64,000 nucleotides of DNA from Asterias rubens (GCF_902459465.1 NC_047070.1:11160001-11224000); one strand, 5' to 3'. Counted from the stretch's first letter, positions 46,522-64,000 are shown. Notes: generated by a model from the sequence alone, not told the origin. Numbers and translations are program-made.

Positions 46522-49500
46522 CTAAGGTATGGGATTTACAATAATGAGGTCATTTTTTTTCAGGTCTGCAAGCAGATTAAATGTCAACTCTTCTTCTTCT
46601 TCATCTTCCAGTTGACTGTCAACATATCTTATTGTGAATAATGATTTCGAAATTATAAGTTTCGTTTCATCACTGTTGAAAGGTATTACGTTGATTATTT
46701 CCCCATCAAACCAGCGAGGTATGCCTGTCGTGTCTATGCATTGATGTTTAACTTTTTTGTTTAGGAGGAGTCTAGGATTTTTTACAAGAATCTCAAGGCT
46801 CCTCTTTGATTGCTGTGTTGCACGTTTTGTTCTTTCTCCTGCCAGTTTGGAGAACAATTTTTTCTTGACCTCATCATATTTCTTTTGTTGTACATGAGGC
46901 TCTATGTAAGTCACAGGTCGTGGTGGTGTTGGAGGCTGCGTTATGTCATCTGGCTCTGACGACAAGTTGTTGGCCTGTACAACTCTGATGAGATGTCGTT
47001 TCATTTGTTCTTTTGTGAACTTGGTGGTTTTGCCTTCGGTAGATGTAGAAAATTGGAAGTACTCTTTTCTGTCAACTTTGGATTTTAGTACCTTTTGATG
47101 GAAGGATAGCTGTGTGTAGATGGCCCGGCGAGCTTCTTCGTCTGTGGATACCTCAAACAGATGGTCACATTTGTTATTGATCGAGTCCTCAGTGCACCAC
47201 ACACCACCCTGTACTGCAATTTCATTGGTCAACTTGACCTGAGCTGCCATTTGTTTGGCCTCTTTTGCTGCCTTTTCTTTGTGTTTATTTTGAAGTTTTT
47301 CCCATAGCTGTATTTTGATGGTGCGCATTTTAGATTTGTACCGCTGGAGGATTTCTGGAGCATGGGCCCTGGCCTGCTCCATATAGAGAGCTTTTGTCGT
47401 GGGGTCCAGTCCATCTAGCCACAACCTTGTACCATTGTTGGCCCACATGATGATCGTTTCCAATGTTGTGATTCTGGCTGATGGCTTCTGTCTCACAAGT
47501 AAATCAAGCCAAGCAAAATCCCTCTCTCCAACTACATTGGTTGTGGGGACATTTGAATAACGCTGCAGCACTTCTGGAGCAGGGTCCCAGTACCTTCCCC
47601 CCGGGAGCTGGTCTTTGCATTGGCGCTCCAAAATGAGGAGGAGCGCACAACACAGCAATTCCAATGCTTGTTGAGTCATACAGTTTAGCTCTCCATCCTG
47701 ACAGTCCCTAAAAAGAGCTTCAGAAATATCATCGGCATGGCATACAGCTCCGTCTACTCCCATCTCACCCATCATTAAGGGAGAAGCATCTTCTTTCCAC
47801 TCGATGAGCTTCAATTGGAGGTGATGGAGAGGGCCATTTAGTGCAAGTACACTCTTTGTCTTCTTAGTTGTCTCCCATAGCGGCTCCGTAACACATTTAT
47901 GTAAGATGCCCAATGCCCTCAATTCAGCTCGGTGAATCTTCTCTTGAGCATCTTCCGTGACAGCGAGTAGAAGCTGATTGGGCTCTGGGAGATGAGTCAC
48001 AAAGTGAACCATATGGTCTAGATGATAAAACGCCGCAGCAGCACCCTCGAACAAGATGTTGGCTCTATTCCCAACGTAGTTTACCAGGTGATTTGTGGTT
48101 CCAAATACAAACTGCAAGTGAGTTGTAAAGGCATCTTCTACTCCACACTGATCCTGAGCCTCGATGGTGAAACGCCTTACTTGCAGTTCTTACGAGCCGT
48201 GTTGCCCCTGCTTCTGATGTGAGAAGAGTATGAGCATTCTTCCCACTTGTAGAAATGTCCTCAAGTGACTTGAGGACCCGGTTTGCTTCCGCAGCAAAAT
48301 TAATCAGGGGATGCATCTTGCAATAAAATTGCCCGAATTGTCCCATGCTTAACTTTACATCATCTGGTAGGTTTTCCCAGTTGGGTGCGACCTTTGGAAG
48401 CAGCTCTTCCCTGATAATTTGCAGACGGTCGCCATACTGGGGCATGGTGGGTCCTTGGTCCGTCATGGCACTTTTTACCGTGCAAAGTAATTCTTTGTAT
48501 GTGTTTGTTGCATCTGACTTCTCAACACAAGAGACAGCATCTGCAAGCTCACGGATCCTATCCTGGTAAGCTTGCACCACTGCCCCCGTGTCTCCTGCAG
48601 CCATTTGTGTCAGCCCCATTGAACGTGATGATCCATCTTGGAGGGACACTTGCCAGTTCTGGTACTTCTTGTGATATTTCGTGGTGCCGTCTCCATGTAT
48701 ACAATTACCAAGGGCATCCTCAAGGCGATTTTCCCGCATTGCCAGTGCCACTTCCAAATCGGCTAAGTGGCTCGCCTCTAAACGAATTTCTGAAATGGTG
48801 CCTACGCATGGTAGTCTCCCGATGTTTTTTTTTCCAAGTGTTTTTAGTACAACACGAATAACTTCATTCACTTTACTAGTCGCCACATTAAATGACAAAA
48901 GTGCCATAATGGTTTCTCTAATTTCGTCTGTGTACTTTCCATCCTTAAAACTTACGATGTCATCATCGTTCATCAGTGCCAACAATTCCTCCAGTTCGTC
49001 TACCCTCTGTGTCATCATCTGTAGTCTGTTATTCAATTTGCCGACATCCTCTGCCGTGTATAACTCAGCGCTGTCTTTTTGCATCATTTTCTGCTTTATT
49101 TTCCACGCCTTCTTTTTTACTTTTGTATTGAAAACCACCTTACTTGCTAGCCTTTCTTCCAACCTCTTCTTTTCTCTTTCAGTGTTTCTCAATTTGGACA
49201 AAGCATCATCTAATTCATTTTTTACTTCTTCAATTGCCTCTGTCATCCTAGACTTTGCTTTCTCAAGTTGTTCATTTTTCTCTTCAGCTGCTCTTATGTT
49301 TTTTTGACGGGTTTTCAACCGCTTGTTCACATTCCTCACACTGTAAGTGCTAATTTTTGTTTCTGCCTTCTCGAATTGTTTTGTCAATGTCTGCAATTTT
49401 TTTGATTGTTCATCATACTGCCTTTTGTATACGTCCAAGTTATCTTGGAGTGGGTTAAACTTCCTATTGACCTCATTCAACTCTATCGTTGCTTCTTCAT

Positions 49501-50520
49501 ACTTTTCCTGTAAGGCTACCAGCTCAATCTCCATTTGTAGCTTGTCATCTTCTAATGCTACCTTTTCCTCCTCTACTATCAACTTGGCATCCTCCACTGC
49601 TAATCTTGTTGCCTTCTCTCTATGCAATTCCTCCTCTAATCCTTCTTGTTGTGTGATCTGTTGGCTCATTTCAGCCATACTTCCTTCTGCATCAGACAAT
49701 CTTTTCTTGGATTTCCGATGTTTCCTCTTCTCTGAGTGTAGTTGTAACCTCAGTTTCCTCTTCCTAGGAGTGTCTGGATTTTTTTTTCCAGCTCTTTGTC
49801 TCACTAACTTAAATTCACTTTCGTGTAACTCTGTCAAAATTTGGTCTTTAACTTTCTTTATGTTTCTTTTAATCTGGACTTCTTTTTTCACTAGCCTTTT
49901 TACAGCCAAACTCAGTACGCTCTCATTTACATTCTCCTGTGATGTTAGTTTCATTAGAACATGTACTAGGGATACATTTTGGTAACCTTGTTTTACAACT
50001 AAATACTTGTACAGTTCAAGCACGAGTCCATTTTTGACTGTTGAAGTCTGGGGGAAAACTGCCTCTCTGATGGGAACTTCGAAGTGGTCTGTAGTCAGCT
50101 CAACATCTGAAGCATAGGGTCCATTTCTATTGAGATAAATAAAGAATAAAGCACTATTCAGAGGACAGCCAAGTGGACAGCTAAATTTGGACAGCCAAGA
50201 CAATCTTAAGTTAAAGCCTTCAAAAATTAGGTAGAGAAAAAACACAAACTCAAAATACCTTTGGAGACAACGCTTGTGCCTGGATCAATAGTTCTTGGGT
50301 GCTGGGAGGTACTGGGAAAGGCATGTGGTTTCCGCAGGGTGTCATCTTCAAGATCACTGGTGGTAGCCTTCACTTGCTGTGAGCCCCTGGAGTCAAGAGC
50401 TATGTTGTCCATCAGCGAATCATCTGGGTGAGGGCTGTAAGACATGTGAAAGGAGCCTCTGTGTGGAGTGGATGGACTCACATCTTAATCATCAGCAGTC
50501 TTGACTAAATAAGCTATAAA
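46522..50520 (-). pseudogene. Large hAT-like (CxxH-clade) DDE transposase, ~1200 aa if one frameshift is repaired, with a long coiled coil and a C-terminal Spindlin-like Tudor domain (unit E)
   Basis: Main exon 50126-46522. Motifs: IHGDGTTK (D), AMTDQGPTM (D), FYCKMHPLINF (CxxH), PTTNVVGERDFAWLD (E, hAT-like ER.F). A single extra base at 48153-48154 separates the 726-aa and 531-aa ORFs (restored reading GSDQCGVEDAF). An upstream exon at ~50510-50259 has a stop. Confidence 0.75.
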
Positions 50521-50851
50521 AAACAACAACATAGATTTTGATTATTGTTAATGAGTATCATAGTACTTTTTGAAAAAGGTTTCCTGTGTAATTTCTTTTT
50601 TAAATATTCACAATCCACTGAAAAATGTGTGTTGTTAATGTATTGTTAGAGTATTTTTTTTTTTTTAAGTGAACACGTACCTTTAGTGGTTCATCGCATC
50701 AATTTGATCCATACAAATCTCAAGACCAACCCTTTTTTTCAAGTTAATACAACTTTTACTTATTCAAAAGACAAGAACACATAATGCTTAAAACTCGGTA
50801 AGAGCATTACTGATAAGTGATTACCAGGGATCACATACAGGCTAAATTGTT

Positions 50852-53800
50852 TCACTTGGTTAGTTTGTCAAGCAGTGCACAAACACTTGGATGAACCTTT
50901 TCCTTGTCTTGTATGTTCAGGACAGGTCTCTGGAAGAACTGCATAGTTTTCTTCAAGGATTTGGGATAAGATAAATTGAAAACATAAAAACAGGCAAAAT
51001 AAACTTCAAAAGCAGAGAGCAAGTGCTTGGTTTCCAATATAGACTCCTCTTCCAGCATGACTGTGTATACGATGTCATCCTCTTCACGTTGGTGAATGAA
51101 GAGGTTCATTTGTGAGTTACCCTGAAAATGGAAGGAAAAAAAGGAATATAAATACGGGAGATAAAAGAATGAAATAATTGTGGATGAGATTTGATGGACG
51201 TAAACAAATCCTGTTGGCATGGGTTTCCCCTCATTCTAGACCTGGAACCTCCCAAATGATACAATTCAGGAGGTTTACAGACTCTGTGCATTACCAGAAA
51301 TACAAAACTACGGGATGGACACAATATGGACTATTTTTGTTTTTACTTTTGATGACTGTTTTATTTCTTTCAAGAACATTTGAATGATCAAGGATTTAAG
51401 GAGAAAATCCTGAAATCCGGAAAAGTGACATGCCTGAAATATAAAAGGCACAATGGCACCATGGCTGAGAACTTTTAAATCATCTTACCTGTTCAGTCAG
51501 TAGCTGATCTAGCTTCTCCTTGAGTAGTATCAGTACCACAGCGATTGAAGCGCAATATGCTTTGCCTGCAATAGAGTGATACTATTGTTATAGTTCAATA
51601 TTTCTGAACTTCTTTGACTATAGCTGAAACATACTAAACCGAGGTACATTTTTCAATATTAGACATGTTTTTATTATACATTAGATCAAAAAGGGGTACC
51701 AATCTTTTGAAAGAACAGTTCCCTGGTAAACTATTTTTATGGTTATTAATATTGCAATTTATTCACATTATTGTGGCTGCCCAAGAAAAGTCTTAAAAGG
51801 AAACAAATTTAACATTATATTCTTTGTGCAAGGAATGCAAATTTGAAAGTGGGACTGCCTTGTTTTAAAGAAACTGAACTAATTTTGAACAAAAAACATG
51901 TCAATCCAGATTTATTGATAGCACTCACTGGAACCGACAGCAAGGCAATGGGGGTGATCATGAAAGCACAGTGATTCCATAAGGCCTTGTGGTTCAATTT
52001 GATAGAAGACCCATGCTGCACAAAAACATAAAATAATTATTTACCCTGACGGTTTTCTTCCGCTGTTTCCGCTAGTGATGCCAATTCCACCAGCTTCTTC
52101 ATGGCAACATGATCTTGCTTCTTGGCCAGAGTATAGAGCTGTTCATGGTACTTTTCCAAACCAGTTTCCAGCTTCCTCCCCAGGTCTTCTGTTGCTATGC
52201 GTTTGAACTCTTTCAAGACCTGTAGGCCCTATACCAGATAAACATGAATACCAGTTGCACATATAAGCAATAAAGATTGAAAGTTGGCTGTCATATTATT
52301 GTACATGTTTCAGATAGCTATGAAGCACCAACCGAAAGAGCATCATTGTTTGGCCTTGACAAACACTTTCAAATTTGTCCCTCGATCGGCCACCATACAC
52401 ACATACAAAAAGAGAGCTTGCCTGACATACAAAAATGAATCAAGCAGCAGCCATCTATCCACTAGCAAATAATAGGTTGCATGCATTTTTCCAGGAATAC
52501 AAAAATGGGTTTGAGTTAATCGATTTTGTAATTAGTCAATACAGTATGCATTGTACAAGTGATAATATGAATCGCAATTTCAATGTGTTTTCAAAGAAAC
52601 ATACCTCGTTTCCACTTGCTAGAAGTACCGGGAAAACTTCTTTGATATCTGCCACCAAAGGACTCTGTTTCACAATAAACTCTCTGTGATCAGCAAATGT
52701 CAGATCCATGAAACGATCAAGTCGGTTTTGGTCAGGTTTCCTCTTGGACAGTTCATCCCTCATTGCAGCTTGATGCCTTTTAATTGATATATCGTCTTCA
52801 CCCTCTGGTCGTTGACTGAGATAGTTTTTAAGACCCCACATCAGCTTGCCGCTCATCTTTGGAGGTGGTCCGCCTGTAGTTGGATCTGAAAGTCGGCGCT
52901 TTCCTGGCACACAATTTGTATCCCTTCGTCTTCTGTCATTTTGAAATCGATATTGAATTCTTTGACGCCACAGATTCTGTGAACAAGCAACATTTAAATA
53001 AGTCTTACTTATCTCAAGGTAAAATAAACATTTGTGGCAAGTTTCATGAAAATCGATCATAAACTTTGGAAAATACCGAGGGGGCACTATGTGCTGACCC
53101 CGGTCCCTGTACGACCAAAAATAGCCCGGACCTGATAGGGTTGAGCCATCTGACCCCTGAATATCCCCTTTCAAAACCCTGCAATTTCTTACCATTGACA
53201 AATTGCCATTTGACACAACTTTGGGAAACTTCTCCAGGAATGCTGAGACTACTTCTGTGTACTGCCATTCTTTCGGATAACTGGGTAACAGGAAAACACA
53301 ATGTCAATAAGTTATTACACTATGGATAGATTATTCACCAATCAATTGCTGTGTTCTCTTTCCCTCCAACTCCCCTCTGCTTACACCTGCCACATTCCCT
53401 TTTGTGTGTAGAATAGTTGCAAAAACAAACAATTTGGAACCTCTGACACAAAACATTTGAGAAATTCCCCCCATATCTCTTTTCTGGGTGTGGGCAGGAG
53501 AGTCATGTACAGATTAGCTTTTTGTTTTTAAATTTCATTAAGCAAAACCAAAGTTTGAGCTTTCTAGTTTGAAAAATAACACATCCACTATAGAGTGGTT
53601 ACAGTTTGTACCCCTAAGCTTGGAATATTTCAACAACAGCAGTTTTACAACATCTCTTGCAGTTTTGATGAGAGAATGAGATATATAGGCATAAAGCTAA
53701 TAATTTTTAGGTATTTTTGAACAACAGTAAACTGTAGATCAGGGTACTGAGTGAGGTTGGATCAGTATGACTATGGAACAAAGATTCTTCCGTCTTCAAG

Positions 53801-54853
53801 GGCTGCGTATGTTCTTGAGAGAAGCTTAACTTGCTAGCAAAACAAACTCTGAACTTACTATGTATACTTCGTGACTTCTTGGTAGATGGCATCTGTGACC
53901 TGTCTCCTCTGTTGAGCTGTTCACCACTTTGCAGCTTCTGCAGTACTCCAGCCCGCAGAGCATATACTGGGAATTTAAACTTGATTGGCCAAACACGGAA
54001 ATCCCTGGTTGTTGTTGCCGTGCATAAAGTAGATCTTTTAAAAGAAAACACAAATTTTAAATTAGGCAATTCAACTTCATTTACTTGATTATTTGTTTTG
54101 AGGAGTACAGAAATATATCATGTGTTAAGTGCTTTCCCGATTTGTCCTTTCAAATATTAATCCACAGACGGTTTTTGTTATTCCATTTGCTAGGGGTGGA
54201 TTACCAAGTGTTGGAAAATTCAAGTGAATAAATTGTAAGGTTGTCAAAATCACTTTTAAATTCTGACTTAAGCACAATGCCATAAATTTAGCAATTTGGG
54301 CATTTAAAAACCACCCCTCCCTCATAAAATGTTCAAGGTTGGACGGGCATCAGTTGAGAGGGGGCATGCCCCCCCCTGTGCCCCCCTTAGTTACGGCACT
54401 GTTGCTAAGTTGCGCCCATTAATATACAATTGTCTGCTGAAACTTGGTCCACAGTGTGATGTCAAGTGATCATCAGTTCTCATGTTCAATAAAATTTCAC
54501 ATTATAACTCATGGTATAACTAGCATTGTTTTTAAGCATCAAAAGACAACTCACCCTTCATCATCTTTGTCTGTTTCAATGCTGCTGGAAGGTGAAGACA
54601 GTGCAGCAGGCGAGTCATCTTTGTCAGAATCATCAGCTTCAGTCAAAACTTGTAATCTCATCATGCTTTCCAGAATTGATGTTGGATCAACATTAACCCA
54701 ATCAGCAAAGTCTTTATCAAAGTACTGAAGTAGCATTGGCTTCCTATCCCTTGGTATGTTGGATTTGTTATGTATGGCCTCAATTACCTCATCCATATTT
54801 CCCTTTTCAGTTGCAGAACTCAATGATCTGCTTCGAACTCGTATGTGTGACAT
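50852..54853 (-). pseudogene. SAMD3-like CACTA-accessory gene with a PB1-like N-terminus (unit F). Exons 54853-54555, 54035-53859, ~53282-53195, ~52977-52606, ~52220-52046, ~51563-51490, ~51121-50852
   Basis: LLQYFDKDFADWVNVD...LQVL; AIYQEVTKYT|.YPKEWQYTEVV..FLEKFP; WRQRIQYRFQNDRR; MDLTFADHREFI...IKEVFPVL; AFEVYFACFYVFNLSYPKSLKKTMQFFQR. One apparent frameshift at ~53890. Confidence 0.75.
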
Positions 54854-54976
54854 GGAATTTAAGACGCGTTTTCTGAAAACATAAGTTTTTACAATACTAT
54901 CAATACTATGTAATGATGATCATATACCACAGCTACTTTTTCCAGTTAATACAGGTATTGACTTTGGTGGATGCAT

Positions 54977-57456
54977 TTATACAGATATCTTGTGTCTAAG
55001 AATTACTAATTTGTTATCACTGTTGGTGGGAAAGTCATACACATCAAGTGGATGGTAGTCAATATCATCCGTAGGTTTAATCAAGATATACCTATGTAGT
55101 GGTGTCACTACATATGCATGGTAATGGATACTAAAGTGTAAGGTTAAAGGTATGTACACAAAAGGTATGGAATGTTGCCAATGAGAAAGCAGTCCTCAAT
55201 CATGAGAAACACGGGAAAACTGTGACTGTATTTCAAAATCACACATGAGCCACAGCAGTATTTGACCCCATTGACCTTAATGCAGTTACTCTCAAAAACT
55301 CGCTCTTGACCACCTAAATGTGGTCGCAATAGTTCTTGAACTTCCTTCAACAACAGCCTGACTAGACTGAGTTTTCCACAAAGTGTGTCGATATGCTGTG
55401 CTTCCAAGTATTTATCTGATGCTAAAAATATTGTTTGCATGAACTGGTGTCTGAAGGCCATACTTTTACAGATGTTCTTTCTGTTTTTCAATCCATGAGT
55501 TATTTCTTTGAAGTAGTTGTGTTTGCCTTCAAACCTGAGTGTCCAACAGTGGATAAGTGGGCCAAATTGCAGAATTTGCCAAGGATAATGCAATGTGTAG
55601 TGGCCTTTGGGTTTCATATTTACATCAGGAAATTCCCTTTTGTACATGTACATGAAATCCTCTATAAGATCTGAAAGAAAGCTCACATCACTTTGTGAAC
55701 AAACTGGTGCACATGATGCTTCCACCATGAACAGGAGGGCCAACAAAACATCCCACTTATTGTCGGCCTCAGGAATTGTGTCACCAACCAAAAGTGGGAA
55801 CAGCCTCAATAAGCACCAACACTGCATTGCTGTTTGCTTCACCCGAAAGTCAGCCACTGTTGATGCCATCCTAGTTGGCTTATTTGACCTGTCAAATTTA
55901 CCATAAGGAAAGCTGTCAATCCTGGTGTTCAAAAACTGGAGAGTGAAGTAACCTTCAGACACACAGTGCAAAACCAGATTCTTAAGCACTTCAGGCACAA
56001 GCCCTTCAAACAGATCATGGGCAATGTCTGAAGGAAGGCCTCTGGTAACATGAAAATACTCTAGCTTATTAAGAGGAGAATCATTTTTCACGCCATATGT
56101 TGTCTTCAATCCTTCATCTTCAGCAACCATTGTAACTTGTGCATTGTAACTTTCCATTGTTCTCATTTCACAGCTGCTGGTCGTCAGACAATCATTAGGG
56201 TCTGTTCTTGTGACCATACAGAAACGACTGACCCTTAAGCCACTGAAACTTTCGTTGAATCCTCCTACTGAATGAGCACCAAGATTGTCTGCTGAAACAA
56301 ATGACACTGAGCCTCTAAACTGATACTGATGACCATTCCTGTTCACACTAACACCTTCTCTTTCTAAAAGTGAAAGATCTCCAAGTAAAGGTTCCAGGAC
56401 TTTCTTTAAACCATACTTTTTCAAGTGTTTTGATTTGCACAGAAGAGCAAGCTGTATGACATACAACTTTGATCTGTATTGTGGTGACAAGTTTCCAAGC
56501 ACAAAATAAAATGCTGCAAGTTTGTAATTCTTAACCTTGTTTCCAAGTGGATTTACAATATTGAAATCATCATAATATAATTGGACCTGTAAACTTGGGC
56601 ATTCAGAAGAAAATAATACATTTCCACTGTATACAGCACCATCACAAAAGTCTCTCAATTTACCATCCTCAGACTTGTGTCCCTGCATTACCTCTGCTAA
56701 TACATCCTCATGTTGCAAAAGCAACTCAAGTGTTTTCAATATGGGTATGTACTGTGTAGACGCACATTTGCCTTGAGCGTCTACTCCAAGAACAAATTCT
56801 ACTGGTTCATTGTAAGGAAACTCAGACTGAATGTAACGACTCAATTGTCTGTTATCTTCCAAGCTGTGAAATATGTCTTCCAATTCTGTTGACCGAATAA
56901 CAGTCATGGCAGTTGCAATCTCATCCTGGTTTACAGCATCTTCAAGTAGAGCTGATTTCAACTCAGACAATTCCTTTGCTTTAAACATCTGCAAAATATT
57001 TACAAGCTCGGACGCAACAAAACTACAAACAGTTCCTGGTACTTTGTGTATTTCTCTTAAATTCAGAAAAAACAGAGCTGCCTTCTTCTTTACATCTATT
57101 ATTCCAATTGGTACGTTTTCTACTGCAGCTTCGATGTTCACAAGTTCTGGACCCTGCAAACCCACCTGCTGCTCAGCCTCCTCAGGTGCTTCTATATCAT
57201 TCAGATCTAGCCCAAGTTCAATTGCATTTAAGAAATGCATGCGGTAAAAATCCTTGTGAACAATTTTTATATGTTTGATGAAGCATCAGACTGTAGAAAG
57301 ATTCTTATGACACCCATTTATATCACAATTTATCTTAAATCTGCCATTGCCAATTTCATGTACGAACCGATAATGGTTTAAGACTCTTTTGAAATGAGGT
57401 GTTTCATATTCACAGTGAACACAGACAAAAACTCTGTTGTTGTAATCCTCTTCCAT
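54977..57456 (-). pseudogene. CACTA/EnSpm (CMC) transposase with an N-terminal C2H2 zinc finger (unit G), nearly intact
   Basis: ATG at 57456 (MEEDY..CVHC...HYRFVH...CDINGC). An in-frame TGA at 57286-57288 reads through into the 698-aa ORF: QLYYDDFNIVNPLG, FYFVLGNL...RS...IQLALL, SADNLGAHSVGGF, DIAHDLFEG, KPKGHYTLHY...GPL...WTLRFEGKHNYFK. A frameshift at ~55150 leads into the terminal HYHAYVV...DYHPL..Y...LRHKI. Confidence 0.88.
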
Positions 57457-57460
57457 GATA

Positions 57461-57830
57461 CCCTTACACAAATTTGCACAAGCTTGCTGGCAAGCTTGTA
57501 ATAAGCTTACCGGCAAGCTTGCAGCAAGCTTACCACAAGCTTGCCAGCAAGCTAGTAACTAGCTTGTATTGTTCCAAATATTTAAATTAGGGCAAGCTTG
57601 CAACAAGCTTGCGGCAAGCTTGTTACAAGCTTGCCAAAATTTGAGATGGTTTACATCGTACAAGCCAGTTACGAGCTTGCTGCAAGCTTGCGGTAAGCTC
57701 GCCGACAAGCTTGCTCTAATTCCAACATTTGGAACAATATAAGCTAGTTACCAGCTTGCTGCAAGCTTGCGACTAGTGACCAGTTTGCAGCAAGCTTGCG
57801 ACTAGTGACCAGTTTGCAGCAAGCTTGCCA
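57461..57830. repeat. Foldback array of caagcttg palindromes beginning CCC, immediately upstream of the unit G start codon
   Basis: More than 15 (c)aagctt(g) motifs; inverted arms gcaagctagtaactagcttgtattgttccaaat (~57548) / atttggaacaatataagctagttaccagcttgc (~57727). Confidence 0.8.
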
Positions 57831-58421
57831 TAAATTTAAATATTTAGAATACAAGCTACGCCATGATTGAAGAAAGCATGCGCTGCAGACGTTTTTTTTT
57901 AGCCGGCAACTTTTAAATCATGCAAAGGCATTGCATATACAGACGCTTGTAAATTCAATTGAACTCAAAGAAATTGGAAAAGTTGAAAGATTGCAAACAT
58001 TTCACCATCGATAAATTTAGTAGTTAACTTGTATTTACTTAAGTATAGTTCAGGCCAAAATTAAGGAGAATGTTATAGTCAAATAATTCACACTGCACTA
58101 GCTTGTTAACAGCAACAAATGAGTAGTTTTATTATTTTTGGTTGTTTCTTTCCCTGTACATGTAAATAAAAATAACAAATATGAGATATTTTATGGTGCA
58201 CACAATGCAGGAGCCTCTTATGCGCATGTACAGTGTTTACGATATTTATAAACCCTTGACGTATATAAATCCTGAGACAGAGGTGTTTGCCTTTTCAGAA
58301 AATAATGAAGTAAAGTCAAATAAATTAATAAAACAATTATTTACCTCTGCAAGACTTGCATGAAGGAATTGGGATGGTGAAATGCAGTTGTGACAACCAA
58401 AATCAGCTGTTGCATTTTTAA

Positions 58422-58650
58422 AGGCACTGTACACTATTGGTAATCACTGTTAGCATAAAAACTTACTTAAAGGCAGTGGACACTATTGGTAAATACTCAA
58501 AATAATTATTAGCATAAAACCTTACTTGGTAATGAGTAATGGGGAGAGGTTGATAATAAAAATCATTGTGAGAAACGGCTCCCTCTGAAGTAAGATAGTT
58601 TTCGAGAAAGAAGTAATTTTCCACTAAAATATATGAATTAATTTCAAGAC
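58422..58650. mobile_element. Two nested 5' halves of MITE family A
   Basis: TTAA-aggcactgtacactattgg at 58418 and TTAA-aggcagtggacactattgg at 58467; both lack 3' ends. Confidence 0.75.
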
Positions 58651-59344
58651 CTCACGCATGAGGTCACAAAAGCAGAATTGACAGTTGGAAGGGTCTCTAT
58701 ACTACTGGTAAAGCACAAAACAGAAAAACAGATGGGGGCCTAAAGTGAGGAGTTTTTCCTGTGAAGGGATCTTCGGGTTGTTGCACATTTCTGATTAATC
58801 TTATCATTGAATTCCTTGGACGTCATGCACGGTTGTCCATTAGGTAACTTGAACTTGCGAAGTACACACTCTAGAAAACAATTGGCAAGAGAAGTTTGTG
58901 TTTAGTCAATGTGTAAATATAAAAGGTTATGGTACAGCTATCATCATGGCCCCATAACGGTTAAAGTGTACTCGGTGCTCTATGGGGCTGCAGAAGACAA
59001 CATTCAAAAGGTACTCAAATCCAAGACATTCTCCATTAAGAACAGATGTCTTATATCATAACGCTGATGTAAATTTTTCGTCATTACTTTGGATACAAAA
59101 AGGTAAATGCAGTTCTTTATTTTATTGTAAATAACTTTCATAGTAAGCTGAAAATTTCAAGTTTGGCTTCACCATTACTCTTGTAAAGAAATGATGCATT
59201 CACTTAATTAAAAAACTGTGCTTGTATTCTTCAAAACATAAACCGTTCTCAAATACATTCAAATGTTGAATGGAACCTTCCAGGAAATAGTTACAGATAT
59301 GATACAGGATTGGTAATGATAACAAACATCTGAAAGCTTTGTTT

Positions 59345-62300
59345 TTAAGGTGATATGAAATCTGTCATCTTCAATAAGAATGTAACTGAAGACCTCAAAA
59401 TAAATATACTGATTTTAATATGCAACGTTGAAGCAATGCATGAATATGAATTGGCACAAAGCAACTGATAAAATATAAACAGTTTGTTCTGTGTTTTTTT
59501 TCTCAAAACCTTGAAGAAATGTTTCTGTGTAATCTGAAAACTATCAGATTGAAAGAACACATTCTTTAAACAATTTTTTTTTATCATACCTGTAAAGTAT
59601 GACTTAAAAAATAAAGTTGCAGGCATATCTTGGAATAATTTCATTTCATTCTCTGTGAACTCCAACAAATAAAAAAAGAAACAAAAATTACCTTTAATTT
59701 CTTGTAATTTCTGTGCATCCAGGGGCACGTTAGCAGATTCACTCTTGCGATTAACCGCCTGCCTGGAGCCACAGGCATTGCCTCGGGCAAGGCAACTCTC
59801 TCCAAAGACAGCTAGTAGCAAAGCAGATAGCAATGACTCCTTGGAGGTGCCTTTTGAGAAAGCAACCCTTTTGTCCTGCTCCTTCAATAGTGGTAATCCT
59901 CCAGAATACAGTGGGATTAAGATCTGTGAAATAAAATAATAAAGTCTCTATGTTAGCAAGGATGTGTTTATTGACAGTGTCTTGTCCAGAAGCCACCTGT
60001 TCACAGTGGATGGGTAAAGCAAAATTTTGGCCAGACTTGTATGGGTGCCTCTTTGGCCCCAAAACCATCTTATCATTATTGTATTTACTTTCGCAAGGAA
60101 AATGTGGATAGACACTTTGTCAATCCTAAACAAGACACTGTTTCTCAATCTCTTAACATTAAAACAATTCTAGTGAGGAAAACTTTTTGCAAAATTTCCT
60201 TTTCAATAAAGGCACTGTAAGCAAGTGTGTAGAATTGTGATCTTCATAGGCTATTTGGGATAGAGATTGTACACAAGGGATGTTTGCACATAGTAATACA
60301 GCACAGGCTGGTTTGGGACCAGGGAAAAAAACATGTTTTAATCGGGACCTTGTAATTTTCGAGCTTGTACTACTAACAAGAGTCCGCTATAGTCAATTAC
60401 CTCATCTGATGTTGGGGTCATGGAAGACTCTTCATTAGGGATGTCTTGGCGGATTGGTTTTGGCAGGATGGCTTCATAGGTGACTTTGGCAGGTGGAGGT
60501 GGGTTTGGCAGGATGGCTTCATAGGTAACTTTGGCAGGTGGAGGTGGGTTTGGCAGGATGGCTTCATAGGTGACTTTGGCAGGTGGAGGTGGATTTGGTT
60601 TTGGCAGGATGGTGACTTTGGCAGGTGGAGGTGGGTTTGGCAGGATGGCTTCATAGGTGACTTTGGCAGGTGGAGGTGGATTTGGTTTTGGCAGGATGGT
60701 GACTTTGGCAGGTGGAGGTGGGTTTGGTTTTGGCAGCTGGCTTGTGGAATGGCAGGACTGTAGCACTGATGTAAACTCTTGCATGAGTTTAATCTTTTTG
60801 GGGGTGATAGCTAATAAAAAAAACCACTAACGATATTACTCATTTTACAACCATAGAATTACCACTGTAAAAATGTAACTAAATGGAAACGACATTGCCT
60901 TAATTTTGGCACATTACATATTTGGTGATGTATTTTCTCCTTATGTTTTTCCTCCCTTGAGGAGATGAGCAAGTTTATTAAGTCAAACCTTTAAAAAATC
61001 CTGACGGGCTGTGGATTTGGTTATTATTTTTGGTACAAAGTGAACCTACCGGATGTTCTAATTTAACAATGGTGAGGGGGTTAAGGTTTAAATCCTTAAA
61101 GATGCTATGTCAGATTTTTGCCCCAAACATTAAAAAATAGTTTTTTTTGAGTGAATGGTATTTCAAGATGTATCACCCGCTCTAACAAAAAAGTTTAACT
61201 TTTACTTTTAATGGTCAGGAACCATGACAAAAATTTAAAACGTTTCTTTTAAAACACATAAGAATTGGTCACGTGATATATTGTCGGGATCCCGACAAAA
61301 ACTAATTTTGAGCACTTTATTTCACTGCTACTAATAATTGGCGGACTTTTACGAGCAATGGCTCAAGCTTGTAACTTTCCCGACCCCCATCAAATTACAT
61401 ATTGAATTTTAAATCAAAATTTTTGGGTCAAATCGGCCAAAAATTTGACATAGCATCTTTAATCACAGGCCTATAAAGCAGACTTTCAGTTTTATTTCAA
61501 GGAAATGTCTATCTTACCAACACTGAAGGGAAGGCCTGTTGCAGACTTTTGACTCAGCTGCATGATTTCTTCATTTTTCTTCTTCACCTCATCATGCAGC
61601 TGTCTGATTTGGTTGTCCCTTTCTGCCAGCTGCTCTTTCAGTTTTGAAATGACTCTGTCCTCCATGCTCTGATGACCATGTTTAACTTCAGCATCTGGTG
61701 GCTTCATACAGAGAGAAAAAACATCAACAGTATGAATATAGGTTTTCTTGATATCGATATGTTGTACTTCAACAGAGACAAACAATTGCCTGGGATCAAG
61801 GATGGTCCGGGGGGTGGGGGGGGGGGGGGGAGAGAGGGGGGCGGAAGGGGTCCCGCCACCAACGCGCCACCTACGTTGAAAATAATCTCATTCGGCTCTC
61901 GTGACTTGGACCGGTCGAAGCTTTACGTACAATACCTATTGTGCAAACGCCGAGCATAATACACGTACATTTCCTATGTACAGTATGGTAAAGATTTGAA
62001 TACACAGTTGCTACCCGCTGCACGCTGGCGGCTGTTAGCTGCCTGGACGGGTCCATTTTATCAGAGGGAGTTGTTATCTCTAAATGTAAATTCACCAAAT
62101 CTTTACACTAGAGAACATCGTAAATGTTTTTTGTGTGTTGCCAACTGCTTCAGTAATTTAATAATTTAATACACAACATATATTTGACCAGTATGAACAT
62201 AGAATCTTTGTGTGGGGTGTTGTATAGGGCCTACTTTGTACTTAACCATCTTGACAACAAAGCAAATTGTTGGATTTTTGTTTATTGTCCAGAAACAAAT

Positions 62301-63669
62301 GCTCAGTTAAATGTTGATGCCTACCTTTACAGTGAACATTTCTCTACACAAAGCTTGCTGCACGTTTAATTTGTCTGCAGTGGCCTTGAGCTTCTCGCCT
62401 TTGCTGATGCTAGTCTTTACACCCACTGCTGACTTTGGTTTAGCAATCTTGCTGGTCTTTGACTTTGGTTGTTGCTCTTGACTGTCTTGACTAGTGACGA
62501 AATCTGGCATCAAAGATTGTTTGCGGCTGCGTTTGGTGCTGCTGGTTGATTGAACATCTGTGGTGTCATGCCTATCCCCAGGCCCAGCAAACTCTTCCAT
62601 CGAGAGCAGCAGTCTCGCTTGCTCATCCTGGAGCTCTTTCTTACTCTCTGTGAAGTTTAATTCAACAAACGTATGGATGTAGGGATGACTATTATTACAA
62701 CAAAATCTATAACAAAGGAGGAATATGCTCGAGTAAATCAGTCTGGTTCCCATAGTCAATCGTAACAGTTGATAGTTTATGTTCTTAAGTTGTTGAAGAA
62801 ACCAAACCCAATAATGATAATGCGTCTTAGAGTTTGACATATCAAGAATACAGTAGGTGATTTTTGAGATTATGTTTGGTCTTTTTGTCATTTTGAGGCA
62901 TTTTTTGTGGCTGGGTGTCACGAAAAAAGGAAGGCATCGTGAGGAGCGACTGCGTCCGACTGGGGCGCTAGTCATGCTATAGACCCGTAAACGTGGCCAA
63001 ACATACTCCGTTCCTCCGTCATTTGGCCACGGACCTATACACGGTGACATGTTTCGACATTGAACGAAAAAAAAACAGGCGTTTTTTCCCCCTAATTTTG
63101 TCCCATCCGTAAAATTTCTAACACAAATGTTGCCATTCAAATCTGTTATTCTAATGCCATGGAAGTGCCCTTTGATTTGAAACATACAAATGCCCTTTTT
63201 ACCCAAGACAAAATGGCCTTGCCCCTCTAGTGACGAAATTTGAGGCCTGAAATTTGTCTTTGTTCAACCCAAAATCATTTAAAATTTCATTGTACCCTGT
63301 CATGCTTGTTGTACCTCCATGTTGTGACTTTTGGTTTATTATTTGATGAGCCCCCCCCCCCCCCTATATAAACCAAACAACCGACTGACATGACTGAATA
63401 TCCACTCATGACTTACCACTGATTTTGATGAGTTTCCCGGGATATTTCTTGCCGTCTTTAAACCGTATTTCAGAGACGGTACCCTCCTTTCTTAGGTCTG
63501 TGCGAACGCTGACGATGTTTTCTATGCTAACTTGCTTATCGTTGATCCAGTAAACCAAACACCACGTTTTGGATTTTGACGATGGTGCTTTTGCTTCGAA
63601 GGGATTAGACCGAGGCTCCAGCCCAAACAACTCTTTCACAACAATGCTAGAGCGACTAGCGTGTGCCAT
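59345..63669 (-). CDS. BEN-domain protein (unit H). Exons 63669-63417, 62647-62325, 61701-61518, 60810-60401, 60125-59997, 59923-59692 and probably 59588-59345; one in-frame TGA at 60122-60120
   Basis: All junctions are GT-AG with consistent phases. N-terminal WCLVYWIND...SEIRFKDGKKYPGKLIKIS (SH3/Tudor-like), a coiled coil (ISKLKEQLAERDNQIRQL), a Pro-rich repeat, then BEN-like SLLSALLLAVFGESCLARGNACG...PLDAQKLQEIK. Confidence 0.7.
60440..60740 (-). repeat. Coding tandem repeat PKPNPPPPAKVT(YEA)IL, about 6-7 units of 36-45 bp, in unit H exon 4
   Basis: Repeats of ggtgactttggcaggtggaggtgg on the plus strand; all length variants are multiples of 3. Confidence 0.9.
61100..61458. mobile_element. 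Fourth TTAA MITE family (intronic in unit H)
   Basis: TIR agatgctatgtcagatttt / aaatttgacatagcatct; TTAA at 61096 and 61459. Confidence 0.85.
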
Positions 63670-64000
63670 TTTAACCTATTGACCTGCTTACAAAGGTCTA
63701 TAGACATAGGTTTCAATTTTATGAAAGAAACAGATTACAAAGGTCAATAGAACTGGGTTACAATTTACAATACGAAAGGAGTAGTAAACTGCAAATTTGC
63801 CAATTGAACAACGCGCCCTTTTCCCCCGCCCACGGCCGACCGACCGGTGTGACGACGATGACGTGTTAGCCGCATGACCATTAATATAGATAGGGGAAAT
63901 AAAACGATACCGATAAAAAATGCATTGACGTTTTTTGTATACCAAAAGCCAAACTGTGTGTTACTTGTTTATTTGTAATATATTTATTGATGCAATATGT

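What the first reader, a model, noticed from the sequence alone, without database searches (positions are those of the whole stretch)
50852..63669. Near-intact three-gene cassette: BEN-domain gene, CACTA/EnSpm transposase, SAMD3-like gene
Seen: three co-oriented genes. The transposase stop (54977) is only ~120 bp from the SAMD3-like start (54853), and the BEN gene ends ~1.9 kb upstream of the transposase ATG. Each gene carries just 1-2 lesions and has intact splice sites. Established: plant CACTA elements need TnpD (transposase) plus the DNA-binding TnpA, which recognises subterminal repeats; BEN domains are sequence-specific DNA-binding modules. Inference: the SAMD3-like and/or BEN protein are the animal functional equivalents of TnpA, making this a large (>13 kb) multi-gene CACTA family.
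Basis: partly seen in the sequence, partly recalled or inferred. Interest (0 to 1): 0.7.

Follow-up and report, generated by a model that had tools for sequence, protein, structure and literature searches.

The report
Two nested CACTA transposons, not one
What looked like one three-gene transposon in a sea-star genome is two cut-and-paste (CACTA-type) transposons, one inserted into the other; each pairs its own transposase with its own helper gene (a SAMD3-like protein or a BEN DNA-binding protein), giving two testable animal candidates for the plant helper protein TnpA.

Summary

**Element B** is the transposase (57456-54977; one TGA, one frameshift) plus the SAMD3-like gene (about 54888-50852; at least two frameshifts). 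This pair forms a real two-gene CACTA transposon. It recurs elsewhere in this genome and in two other sea stars, a brittle star, a sea cucumber, a mussel and a fish. Complete copies have CACTG...CAGTG ends and 2-bp target duplications.

**Element A** holds the BEN gene (63669-58740), which reads as six open exons with no lesion found. A is a separate 11,441-bp CACTA transposon spanning 57461 to 68901, so it runs past the window's end. It has CCCTTACA inverted ends, arrays of the palindrome GCAAGCTTGC at both ends, and its own open tnp2 transposase on the plus strand beyond position 64000. A sits 4 bp upstream of B's transposase ATG, cutting B's genes off from B's 5' leader (68902-69547).

The helper idea survives only as one helper per element. 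That either helper binds the element's ends is inference.

This scan had already noted both element kinds elsewhere in this genome (s1-150324, s1-150518). I reached the same reading independently here.

The parts
50616..50624 (-). Candidate 3' terminus of element B (reads ...TTTTCAGTG on the element strand).
   Evidence: This is the only CACTGAAA(A) match in the right orientation downstream of the SAMD3-like stop. It shares 9 nt with B's 5' terminus. A GACAAGA subterminal motif lies at 50770 in inverted orientation. The flanking dinucleotides do not match (TC vs TA on the plus strand), so this end is only a candidate.
50852..54888 (-). SAMD3-like helper gene of element B, now a pseudogene. Seven exons: about 54888-54555, 54034-53859, 53280-53193, 52976-52605, 52228-52045, 51565-51489, 51121-50852. 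Domain order: N-terminal PB1-like domain, then a helical core, then a mixed C-terminal domain.
   Evidence: Exon-by-exon match to Patiria protein P0084 and to Patiria locus L037 at 55-86% identity. Frameshifts lie near 54818 and 53900. Relatives are named 'SAMD3-like' by NCBI.
54977..57456 (-). Transposase 1 of element B: an N-terminal C2H2 finger plus a tnp2/CACTA catalytic core. It is a pseudogene with a TGA at 57288-57286 and a frameshift near 55145.
   Evidence: The D, D, E residues and the H(3)H motif are kept. The first Cys of the C(2)C motif is Ser, as in its closest relative P0001.
57457..57460 (.). Four bases of element B left between its ATG and the inserted element A.
   Evidence: Homology to the Patiria copy runs up to 57459. 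Homology between the two copies of A starts at 57458-57461.
57461..57468 (+). Left inverted terminal repeat of element A (CCCTTACA).
   Evidence: The same 8 nt occur inverted at 68894-68901 and at both ends of copy 2 (C10:12236139 and 12248605). Flanking DNA is unrelated.
57479..57828 (.). Left subterminal array of element A: 13 sites of the palindrome GCAAGCTTGC.
   Evidence: 19 strand-matches against 0.53 expected by chance. The twin array lies at L033:4431-4877. The motif is absent from all 29 other transposase-1 loci fetched.
58740..63669 (-). BEN-domain helper gene of element A. Six exons and 510 codons, apparently intact. Domain order: conserved N-terminal domain, coiled coil, Pro-rich repeats (60810-60401), then a BEN domain split over exons 5 and 6.
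   Evidence: Gene model. BEN support: Pfam PF10523 at E 5e-4 to 9e-4 on exon 5 alone; NACC1 BEN chains at E 0.09; 19 of 30 Atlas neighbours are BEN clusters at score 0.95. All six exons are kept in copy 2.
61096..61462 (.). Unrelated high-copy MITE inside BEN intron 3 (28-nt inverted ends).
   Evidence: Seen as inverted repeat I15 and as very deep, multi-contig coverage in all four runs laid.
63670..64000 (.). Start of the region between the two divergent genes of element A. The rest of A lies beyond the window, in locus L033 (64001-70000): a likely transposase-2 exon 1 at 64511-64918, the main open exon at 65515-67854 (+), the right array at 68431-68877 and the right end at 68901. Element B's 5' leader follows at 68902-69547, ending in CACTG.

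Best explanation
The region holds two autonomous-type transposons of the CACTA/EnSpm (tnp2) superfamily, one nested in the other.

**Element B**
- B spans about 50616-69547 and is about 7.5 kb without the insert.
- It has CACTG...CAGTG ends and short GACAAGA subterminal repeats.
- It carries two co-oriented genes: a C2H2-finger tnp2 transposase and a PB1/SAMD3-like helper.
- In relatives, the annotated helper mRNA starts upstream of the transposase ORF. This suggests one transcription unit with alternative splicing, as in maize En/Spm.

**Element A**
- A spans 57461-68901 (11,441 bp). It inserted 4 bp upstream of B's transposase ATG and cut B's genes off from B's 5' leader. B has since decayed.
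- A has CCC-type inverted ends and 13-site arrays of the palindrome GCAAGCTTGC at both ends.
- It carries two head-to-head genes: an open tnp2 transposase and an apparently intact gene for a coiled-coil BEN-domain protein.

**Shown:** the boundaries of A, the nesting, both gene pairings, their conservation, and purifying selection on the genes.

**Inferred:** the BEN protein dimerises and binds the palindromic arrays to bring A's ends to the transposase, as TnpA does. The SAMD3-like protein would do a comparable end-binding or assembly job for B through its PB1 oligomerisation domain and helical core.
For: **Element A as a discrete mobile unit**
- The window copy and C10:12236139-12248605 are colinear and inverted. 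Homology stops exactly at CCCTTACA on both sides, and the flanks are unrelated.
- Motif arrays sit at both ends of both copies.
- Transposase 2 matches PF02992 at 52.4 bits against a cutoff of 28.6.
- Both transposase-2 copies are open, and dN/dS between them is 0.19.

**BEN paired with transposase 2**
- Three of three BEN exon-1 hits in the genome are head-to-head with a transposase-2 relative.
- A 42%-identical relative on C32 keeps the same layout but has a different end motif, CAG[G/T]CATCA.
- BEN-gene matches lie divergent from the transposase homologue in Apostichopus (first and last exons) and in Holothuria (first exon only).

**Element B**
- The pair is found in Asterias amurensis, Patiria, Apostichopus, Amphiura, Mytilus (three loci) and Astyanax.
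- Complete copies have CACTG ends and 2-bp target duplications: TT, TA and TT in Mytilus, TT in Patiria, TA in Astyanax.
- dN/dS between the window and Patiria copies is 0.18 for the transposase and 0.16 for the helper.

**Nesting**
- Patiria's 5' terminal block aligns to 69451-69553, beyond A. Both species begin homology at CACTGAAAACATT.

**Helper domains**
- The helper's N-terminal domain models as a PB1 fold: Z 9.9, rmsd 1.8 A over 72 residues against NBR1 PB1.
Against: - No binding or transposition data exist. The helper roles are inference.
- The target duplication of A is not clean: CA/CA in copy 2, but ATA/ACA in the window copy.
- B's 3' end in the window rests on a 9-nt match, and its flanking dinucleotides differ.
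- The BEN domain scores below Pfam's threshold on the single exon that could be tested.
- The helical core of the SAMD3-like protein has no convincing structural relative. The best scores are Z 4.5-5.3, including homeodomains and a BEND6 BEN domain.
- No RNA evidence for the BEN gene was found.
- The two halves of A's two copies differ in divergence: synonymous difference is 0.25 in the transposase and 0.72 in BEN exon 5. A's history is therefore not a simple duplication.
Confidence: 0.85

Rival explanations
1. One reading: one CACTA element longer than 13 kb carries BEN, transposase and SAMD3-like genes as a three-gene cassette.
For: The three genes are adjacent and co-oriented.
Against: - A transposon terminus and array lie between the BEN gene and the transposase.
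- Homology of the closest paralogues (C18) and of the Patiria copy with the window stops at the ATG.
- Complete relatives end without a BEN gene.
- BEN pairs with another transposase instead.
Confidence: 0.03
2. The BEN gene is a captured host gene, a passenger in element A with no role in transposition.
For: - The BEN half of A's two copies is much more diverged than the transposase half.
- No expression was seen.
Against: - The pairing and head-to-head layout persist in a 42%-identical element (C32) and in two sea cucumbers.
- No BEN copy of this type was found away from such elements in this genome.
- The exons stay open in the window copy.
Confidence: 0.12
3. The transposase-1 / SAMD3-like pair in the window is a domesticated host locus shared with Patiria that has recently become a pseudogene, not a transposon copy.
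For: - Exons are 72-75% identical in protein to the Patiria copy, with dN/dS about 0.17, while introns do not align.
- There is only one near-full copy in this genome.
Against: - The Patiria copy has inverted ends and a TT target duplication.
- No flanking gene is shared within the 10 kb fetched on each side.
- Relatives are multi-copy at over 99% identity in Mytilus.
Confidence: 0.05
4. The SAMD3-like protein is a conserved element gene but not an end-binding helper. It could instead be a regulator or scaffold acting on host factors or on silencing, through its PB1 domain.
For: - There is no clear DNA-binding fold.
- PB1 domains are protein-protein modules.
- Transposase 1 has its own C2H2 finger that could read the ends.
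Against: - Strict linkage and equal selective constraint with the transposase across phyla.
- The first helical subdomain gives repeated weak homeodomain-like and BEN-like matches.
Confidence: 0.3

Closest known systems
Maize En/Spm (CACTA) with TnpD transposase and TnpA end-binding protein
   Same: - tnp2-type transposase, subterminal repeat arrays and a second element-encoded protein.
- In B-type relatives, the annotated helper mRNA spans the transposase ORF, like tnpA/tnpD alternative splicing (PMC1636069 for the maize facts).
   Different: - Neither helper resembles TnpA in sequence.
- Element A uses two divergent genes instead of one transcription unit.
- Target duplications are 2 bp, not 3 bp.
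Animal CACTA ('TRC') elements such as SmTRC1 of Schistosoma mansoni (PMC1636069)
   Same: - Transposase_21 domain.
- Inverted repeats starting with CCC.
- 2-bp target duplications.
- A suspected but unidentified TnpA-like second protein.
   Different: That paper found no second protein conserved between animal elements. Here two lineages each keep a recognisable helper across classes or phyla (BEN; PB1/SAMD3-like).
BEN-domain DNA-binding factors (Insensitive/BEN-solo, BANP, BEND3, NACC1), cited from general knowledge
   Same: A BEN domain preceded by a coiled coil. Several of these factors are reported to bind short palindromes as dimers, and A's array motif is a perfect 10-bp palindrome.
   Different: Here the gene is carried by a transposon. 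Binding is untested. The domain match is below Pfam's threshold on the single exon tested.
PIF/Harbinger two-gene transposons (transposase plus Myb-like DNA-binding protein), cited from general knowledge
   Same: A separate helper gene is obligatorily linked to the transposase and has been co-domesticated in hosts.
   Different: Different transposase superfamily and unrelated helper folds.
Vertebrate SAMD3
   Same: NCBI names many relatives of the window's helper 'SAMD3-like', in echinoderms, molluscs, ticks and fishes.
   Different: No SAM domain appears in the window's exons or in any of 53 relatives scanned; the N-terminus is PB1-like instead. Homology to SAMD3 proper was not tested here.

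Membership tests
CACTA/EnSpm (CMC) superfamily - element A | Transposase with the Transposase_21 (tnp2, PF02992) domain | tested here: met
   L033:1515-3854 scores 52.4 bits (E 5e-14) against a cutoff of 28.6.
CACTA/EnSpm (CMC) superfamily - element A | [quoted passage not shown] | tested here: met
   CPRC and HQLLH followed by FE are present. C303, C306, H517, H521 and E541 are invariant across 13 family members.
CACTA/EnSpm (CMC) superfamily - element A | Terminal inverted repeats of the CAC/CCC type | tested here: met
   CCCTTACA occurs at both ends of both copies. CCC-type ends are described for animal CACTA elements (PMC1636069).
CACTA/EnSpm (CMC) superfamily - element A | Target-site duplication of 2-3 bp | tested here: inconclusive
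   Copy 2 has CA/CA. The window copy has ATA/ACA, one mismatch.
CACTA/EnSpm (CMC) superfamily - element A | Subterminal repeat arrays at both ends | tested here: met
   13 GCAAGCTTGC sites at each end. Matches are 19 and 23, against 0.53 and 0.09 expected.
CACTA/EnSpm (CMC) superfamily - element B | tnp2-type transposase | tested here: met
   The window copy alone gives only E 0.12. However, 4 of 14 family members hit PF02992 (best E 5e-7), and the family profile matches the transposase-2 family at 99.3% probability over 550 columns.
CACTA/EnSpm (CMC) superfamily - element B | CACTG/CACTA inverted ends with a short target duplication | tested here: met
   Met in Mytilus, Patiria and Astyanax copies. 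In the window genome the 5' end (69547) is clear, but the 3' end (50616) is only a candidate and the flanks do not match.
BEN domain (PF10523) | Match to the BEN profile above the curated cutoff | tested here: inconclusive
   Exon 5 alone scores 19.8-20.7 bits against a cutoff of 23.2, covering profile positions 2-45 of 76. Supporting evidence: NACC1 BEN chains at E 0.09 and 19 of 30 Atlas neighbours being BEN clusters at 0.95. The joined exon 5+6 protein was not searched.
SAMD3 family | N-terminal SAM domain | tested here: not met
   No SAM hit in the window's exons or in 53 relatives.
SAMD3 family | Homology of the non-SAM region to vertebrate SAMD3 itself | not tested
   Only the name 'SAMD3-like', given by NCBI to relatives, was seen.
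PB1 domain | PB1-type beta-grasp fold at the N-terminus of the helper | tested here: met
   Shown on relative P0208, not on the window's broken copy: Z 9.9 to NBR1 PB1 and Z 9.7 to the PKC-iota/Par6 PB1 complex. Pfam PB1 is below threshold on the Patiria orthologue (E 0.001).

The most novel reading that the evidence does not exclude
Animal CACTA lineages each carry a lineage-specific, sequence-reading helper that co-evolves with its end motif. In the BEN lineage, the window element uses GCAAGCTTGC and its C32 relative uses CAG[G/T]CATCA. In the other lineage, a PB1/SAMD3-like helper pairs with GACAAGA repeats. Host genes such as vertebrate SAMD3 and some BEN-domain factors would then descend from these transposon helpers.
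Probability: 0.3. Interest if true: 0.75.

Novelty: new variant of a known kind. Interest (0 to 1): 0.55.

Why it matters
- Animal CACTA elements are known, but their second proteins have stayed anonymous. The 2006 SmTRC1 paper found none conserved between animals.
- Here two helpers are identified by linkage across classes or phyla, with defined ends and end motifs.
- That yields concrete, cheap tests: BEN domain against a 10-bp palindrome, and intact mussel copies with or without the SAMD3-like gene.
- It also gives a transposon origin to test for the large 'SAMD3-like' gene families that clutter invertebrate and fish annotations.
- For annotation, it shows that adjacency in transposon-rich islands misleads. 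The nested insert explains why element B decayed.

Tried and rejected
**Searches that gave nothing useful**
- Pfam on single exons of the SAMD3-like gene and on the BEN N-terminal exon: no hits.
- Protein Atlas on SAMD3-like exon 4: only noise at or below 0.81.
- Word search with that exon: only two proteins, because of the length window.
- Foldseek against PDB for the SAMD3-like protein, with and without the PB1 domain: nothing beyond the PB1 domain.
- The wide structural search gave only Z of 5.3 or less for the core.
- DNA homology between the stretch beyond A and the C18 paralogues: none.
- A long inverted repeat for B inside the window genome: none, only the 9-nt CACTGAAAA match.
- Bilateral motif arrays in the sea-cucumber loci: not seen within the 10-kb flanks.
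- RNA evidence for the BEN gene: the runs held only repeats and unspliced pieces.
- Literature search for SAMD3 or BEN linked with CACTA transposons: nothing relevant.

**Ideas rejected**
- The Ser in place of the first Cys of the C(2)C motif is not a lesion. Relative P0001 shares it.

**Steps limited or left out**
- The joined (spliced) proteins of the BEN and SAMD3-like genes were not searched or folded. Searches were done exon by exon, and only the length and stop count of the joined BEN model were computed locally.


Full report
**Setting**

The window is C10:11160001-11224000 of a 417.6-Mb animal genome. The closest protein relatives come from sea stars and other echinoderms. All three genes of the finding lie on the minus strand.

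**The transposase (transposase 1)**

- The ORFs at 57516-57286 and 57240-55144 are in one frame, separated by a single TGA at 57288-57286. The last 54 codons continue in another frame down to the TAA at 54979-54977.
- Compared with an intact 828-codon ORF in Patiria miniata (75% identity), the window copy has exactly these two lesions.
- Alone it only brushes Pfam Transposase_21 (E 0.12). However, 4 of 14 family members hit it.
- Its family profile aligns with a bona fide tnp2 family at 99.3% probability over 550 columns.
- The catalytic D, D and E and the H(3)H motif are kept.
- An N-terminal C2H2 finger is present.
- The genome holds at least 67 matches of this diverse family, many open and some more than 99.9% identical to each other.

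**The SAMD3-like gene**

- Seven exons match Patiria protein P0084 and the Patiria locus. Frameshifts lie near 54818 and 53900, and there is no in-frame ATG for the ancestral start. Exons 3-7 are open.
- A full-library search with P0084 found 519 relatives. They occur in echinoderms, molluscs, ticks, an amphipod and teleosts, and NCBI repeatedly names them 'sterile alpha motif domain-containing protein 3-like'.
- No SAM domain is present in any of 53 relatives scanned.
- A confident model of a sea-cucumber relative (pLDDT 87) shows an N-terminal PB1 fold (Z 9.9 to NBR1 PB1).
- The core of about 390 residues has no clear structural relative. Only repeated weak homeodomain-like and BEN-like matches (Z 4.5-4.7) hit its first helical subdomain.

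**Linkage of transposase 1 with the SAMD3-like gene**

- In this genome, 8 of 12 hits to exon 4 (the window's own included) lie within 12 kb downstream of, and co-oriented with, a transposase-1 relative of 34-75% identity.
- The same order is seen in Asterias amurensis, Patiria, Apostichopus, Amphiura, three Mytilus edulis loci and Astyanax mexicanus.
- The three Mytilus copies are more than 99% identical over 10.2-10.9 kb. They end in CACTGAAAAAA...TTTTTTTCAGTG with inverted repeats of about 30 bp, and have 2-bp duplications of TT, TA and TT.
- The Patiria copy (10.55 kb, TT) and the Astyanax copy (8.2 kb, TA) end the same way.
- dN/dS between the window and Patiria copies is 0.18 for the transposase and 0.16 for the helper.
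- In Apostichopus and Amphiura the annotated helper gene starts upstream of the transposase ORF and spans it. This resembles the single En/Spm transcription unit and is an inference from public gene models.

**The BEN gene belongs to another element**

- Directly upstream of the transposase ATG lies an array of 13 GCAAGCTTGC sites at 57479-57828. It gives 19 matches against 0.53 expected.
- The array is absent from every other transposase-1 locus fetched. The closest paralogues (C18) share no sequence with the window upstream of the ATG.
- A twin array lies 11 kb away, beyond the window's end (L033:4431-4877).
- Between the BEN gene and that twin array sits a plus-strand 779-codon open frame that is a clear tnp2 transposase.
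- A second copy of the whole unit lies inverted at C10:12236139-12248605. Homology to the window copy stops exactly at CCCTTACA on both sides, and the flanks are unrelated.
- Element A is therefore 57461-68901, or 11,441 bp.
- Both transposase-2 copies are open, 88% identical, with dN/dS 0.19.
- A partial third copy lies at about C7:9.653-9.656 Mb.
- CCC-type ends and 2-bp duplications are described for animal CACTA elements (PMC1636069). Copy 2 has CA/CA, while the window copy has ATA/ACA, so the duplication is unsettled.

**The BEN gene itself**

- A six-exon model with GT-AG introns reads as 510 codons with no internal stop. I see no lesion.
- All six exons are kept in copy 2.
- The BEN assignment rests on three lines of evidence:
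  - a sub-threshold Pfam hit on exon 5, which carries half of the domain;
  - NACC1 BEN chains in the PDB;
  - 19 of 30 Atlas neighbours being BEN clusters.
- All three exon-1 hits in the genome are head-to-head with a transposase-2 relative.
- The third hit, on C32, is 42% identical in the transposase. It has the same layout (N-terminal domain, coiled coil, low-complexity repeats, a weak BEN-like exon). It also has bilateral arrays of a different motif, CAG[G/T]CATCA.
- In Apostichopus, matches to the first and last exons of the BEN gene lie divergent from the transposase-2 homologue. In Holothuria only the first exon matches.

**Nesting**

- A's left end is 4 bp from B's ATG.
- Patiria's 5' terminal block (L037:8717-8818) aligns to 69451-69553, beyond A's right end. 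In both species homology starts at CACTGAAAACATT, with unrelated DNA outside it.
- B's 5' terminus is therefore at 69547, and A split B's 650-bp leader from its genes.
- B's 3' end is probably at 50616. This rests on a 9-nt terminal match and a GACAAGA subterminal motif in the expected inverted orientation. Its flanks do not match.
- Patiria has four GACAAGA motifs within 120 bp of one end and two within 70 bp of the other, against 0.12 per kb expected.

**How it most likely works**

- Each element is a cut-and-paste unit whose transposase needs, or is helped by, its own second protein. The boundaries, pairings and selective constraint are shown.
- Inferred for A: the coiled-coil BEN protein dimerises on the palindromic sites and gathers both ends for transposase 2.
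- Inferred for B: the PB1 domain oligomerises the SAMD3-like protein on or near the GACAAGA repeats.
- Inferred for the history: loss of its leader silenced B, which then decayed.

**Limits**

- No RNA support for the BEN gene was found. The runs held only a MITE, poly-G and unspliced pieces.
- The joined spliced proteins were not searched or folded. Searches were exon by exon.

**Earlier notes of this scan**

s1-150324 (SAMD3-like partner of an animal CACTA element) and s1-150518 (CACTA element with palindromic end arrays and a BEN partner) describe the same two kinds of element on other DNA of this genome. I saw them only after reaching the same reading, and I tested both claims here. s1-150432 identifies the neighbouring ORF at 48065-50245 as a hAT-type transposase with a Spindlin module. 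I did not retest that.

Noticed in passing
window 61096-61462: A 367-bp MITE with 28-nt inverted ends sits in BEN intron 3. It has very high, multi-contig depth in all four runs laid, so it is a high-copy family.
   Followed up: partly
window about 53020-53135 (codons 28-66 of ORF 52536-53216, in SAMD3-like intron 3): A short repeat in this intron matches at least 12 other places in the genome at 50-59% protein-level identity, most with a TAG stop. It is probably another small interspersed repeat.
   Followed up: no
window 48065-50245 (-): A 726-codon open ORF starts about 370 bp beyond element B's candidate 3' end. It has 43 relatives in the genome. The window is a transposon-rich island.
   Followed up: no
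window 57461-64000 with L033, compared against L034/L035 (C10:12236139-12248605): The two copies of element A are mosaic in divergence. The transposase half is 88% identical in DNA (synonymous difference 0.25), while the BEN half is 70-78% identical (synonymous difference 0.72 in exon 5). Gene conversion or recombination between subfamilies is possible.
   Followed up: partly
G000 C7:9652923-9656321: A partial third copy of element A. BEN exon 5 (73% identical) and a terminal GCAAGCTTGC array sit at the same 2.97-kb spacing as in copy 2. No transposase-2 hit or BEN exon-1 hit lies nearby.
   Followed up: no
L009, L011-L014 (C82, C2, C24, C8) and L023-L028: Two distant transposase-1 subfamilies (30-33% identical to the window copy) occur as 5-6 copies that are 99.5-100% identical over the whole 4.7-5 kb fetched, on different contigs. 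This points to recent activity, or to duplicated assembly pieces.
   Followed up: no
window 56229-56227 (codon 338 of ORF 57240-55144): The first Cys of the C(2)C motif is Ser in the window's transposase 1 and in its relative P0001, but Cys in the 12 other family members aligned.
   Followed up: partly
window 54977-57456 and 50852-54888, compared against L037 (Patiria): Synonymous divergence between the window and Patiria copies of element B is only about 0.8-1.0. No host-gene yardstick was available to judge whether this is low for two sea-star orders, which could hint at horizontal transfer.
   Followed up: no
window 63409-63669 (BEN exon 1): The N-terminal 85 residues of the BEN-gene product are conserved in copy 2, in the C32 element and in two sea cucumbers (36-61% identity), but match no Pfam family. 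The sequence pattern looks like a small beta-barrel (Tudor/chromo-like?). It was not folded.
   Followed up: no
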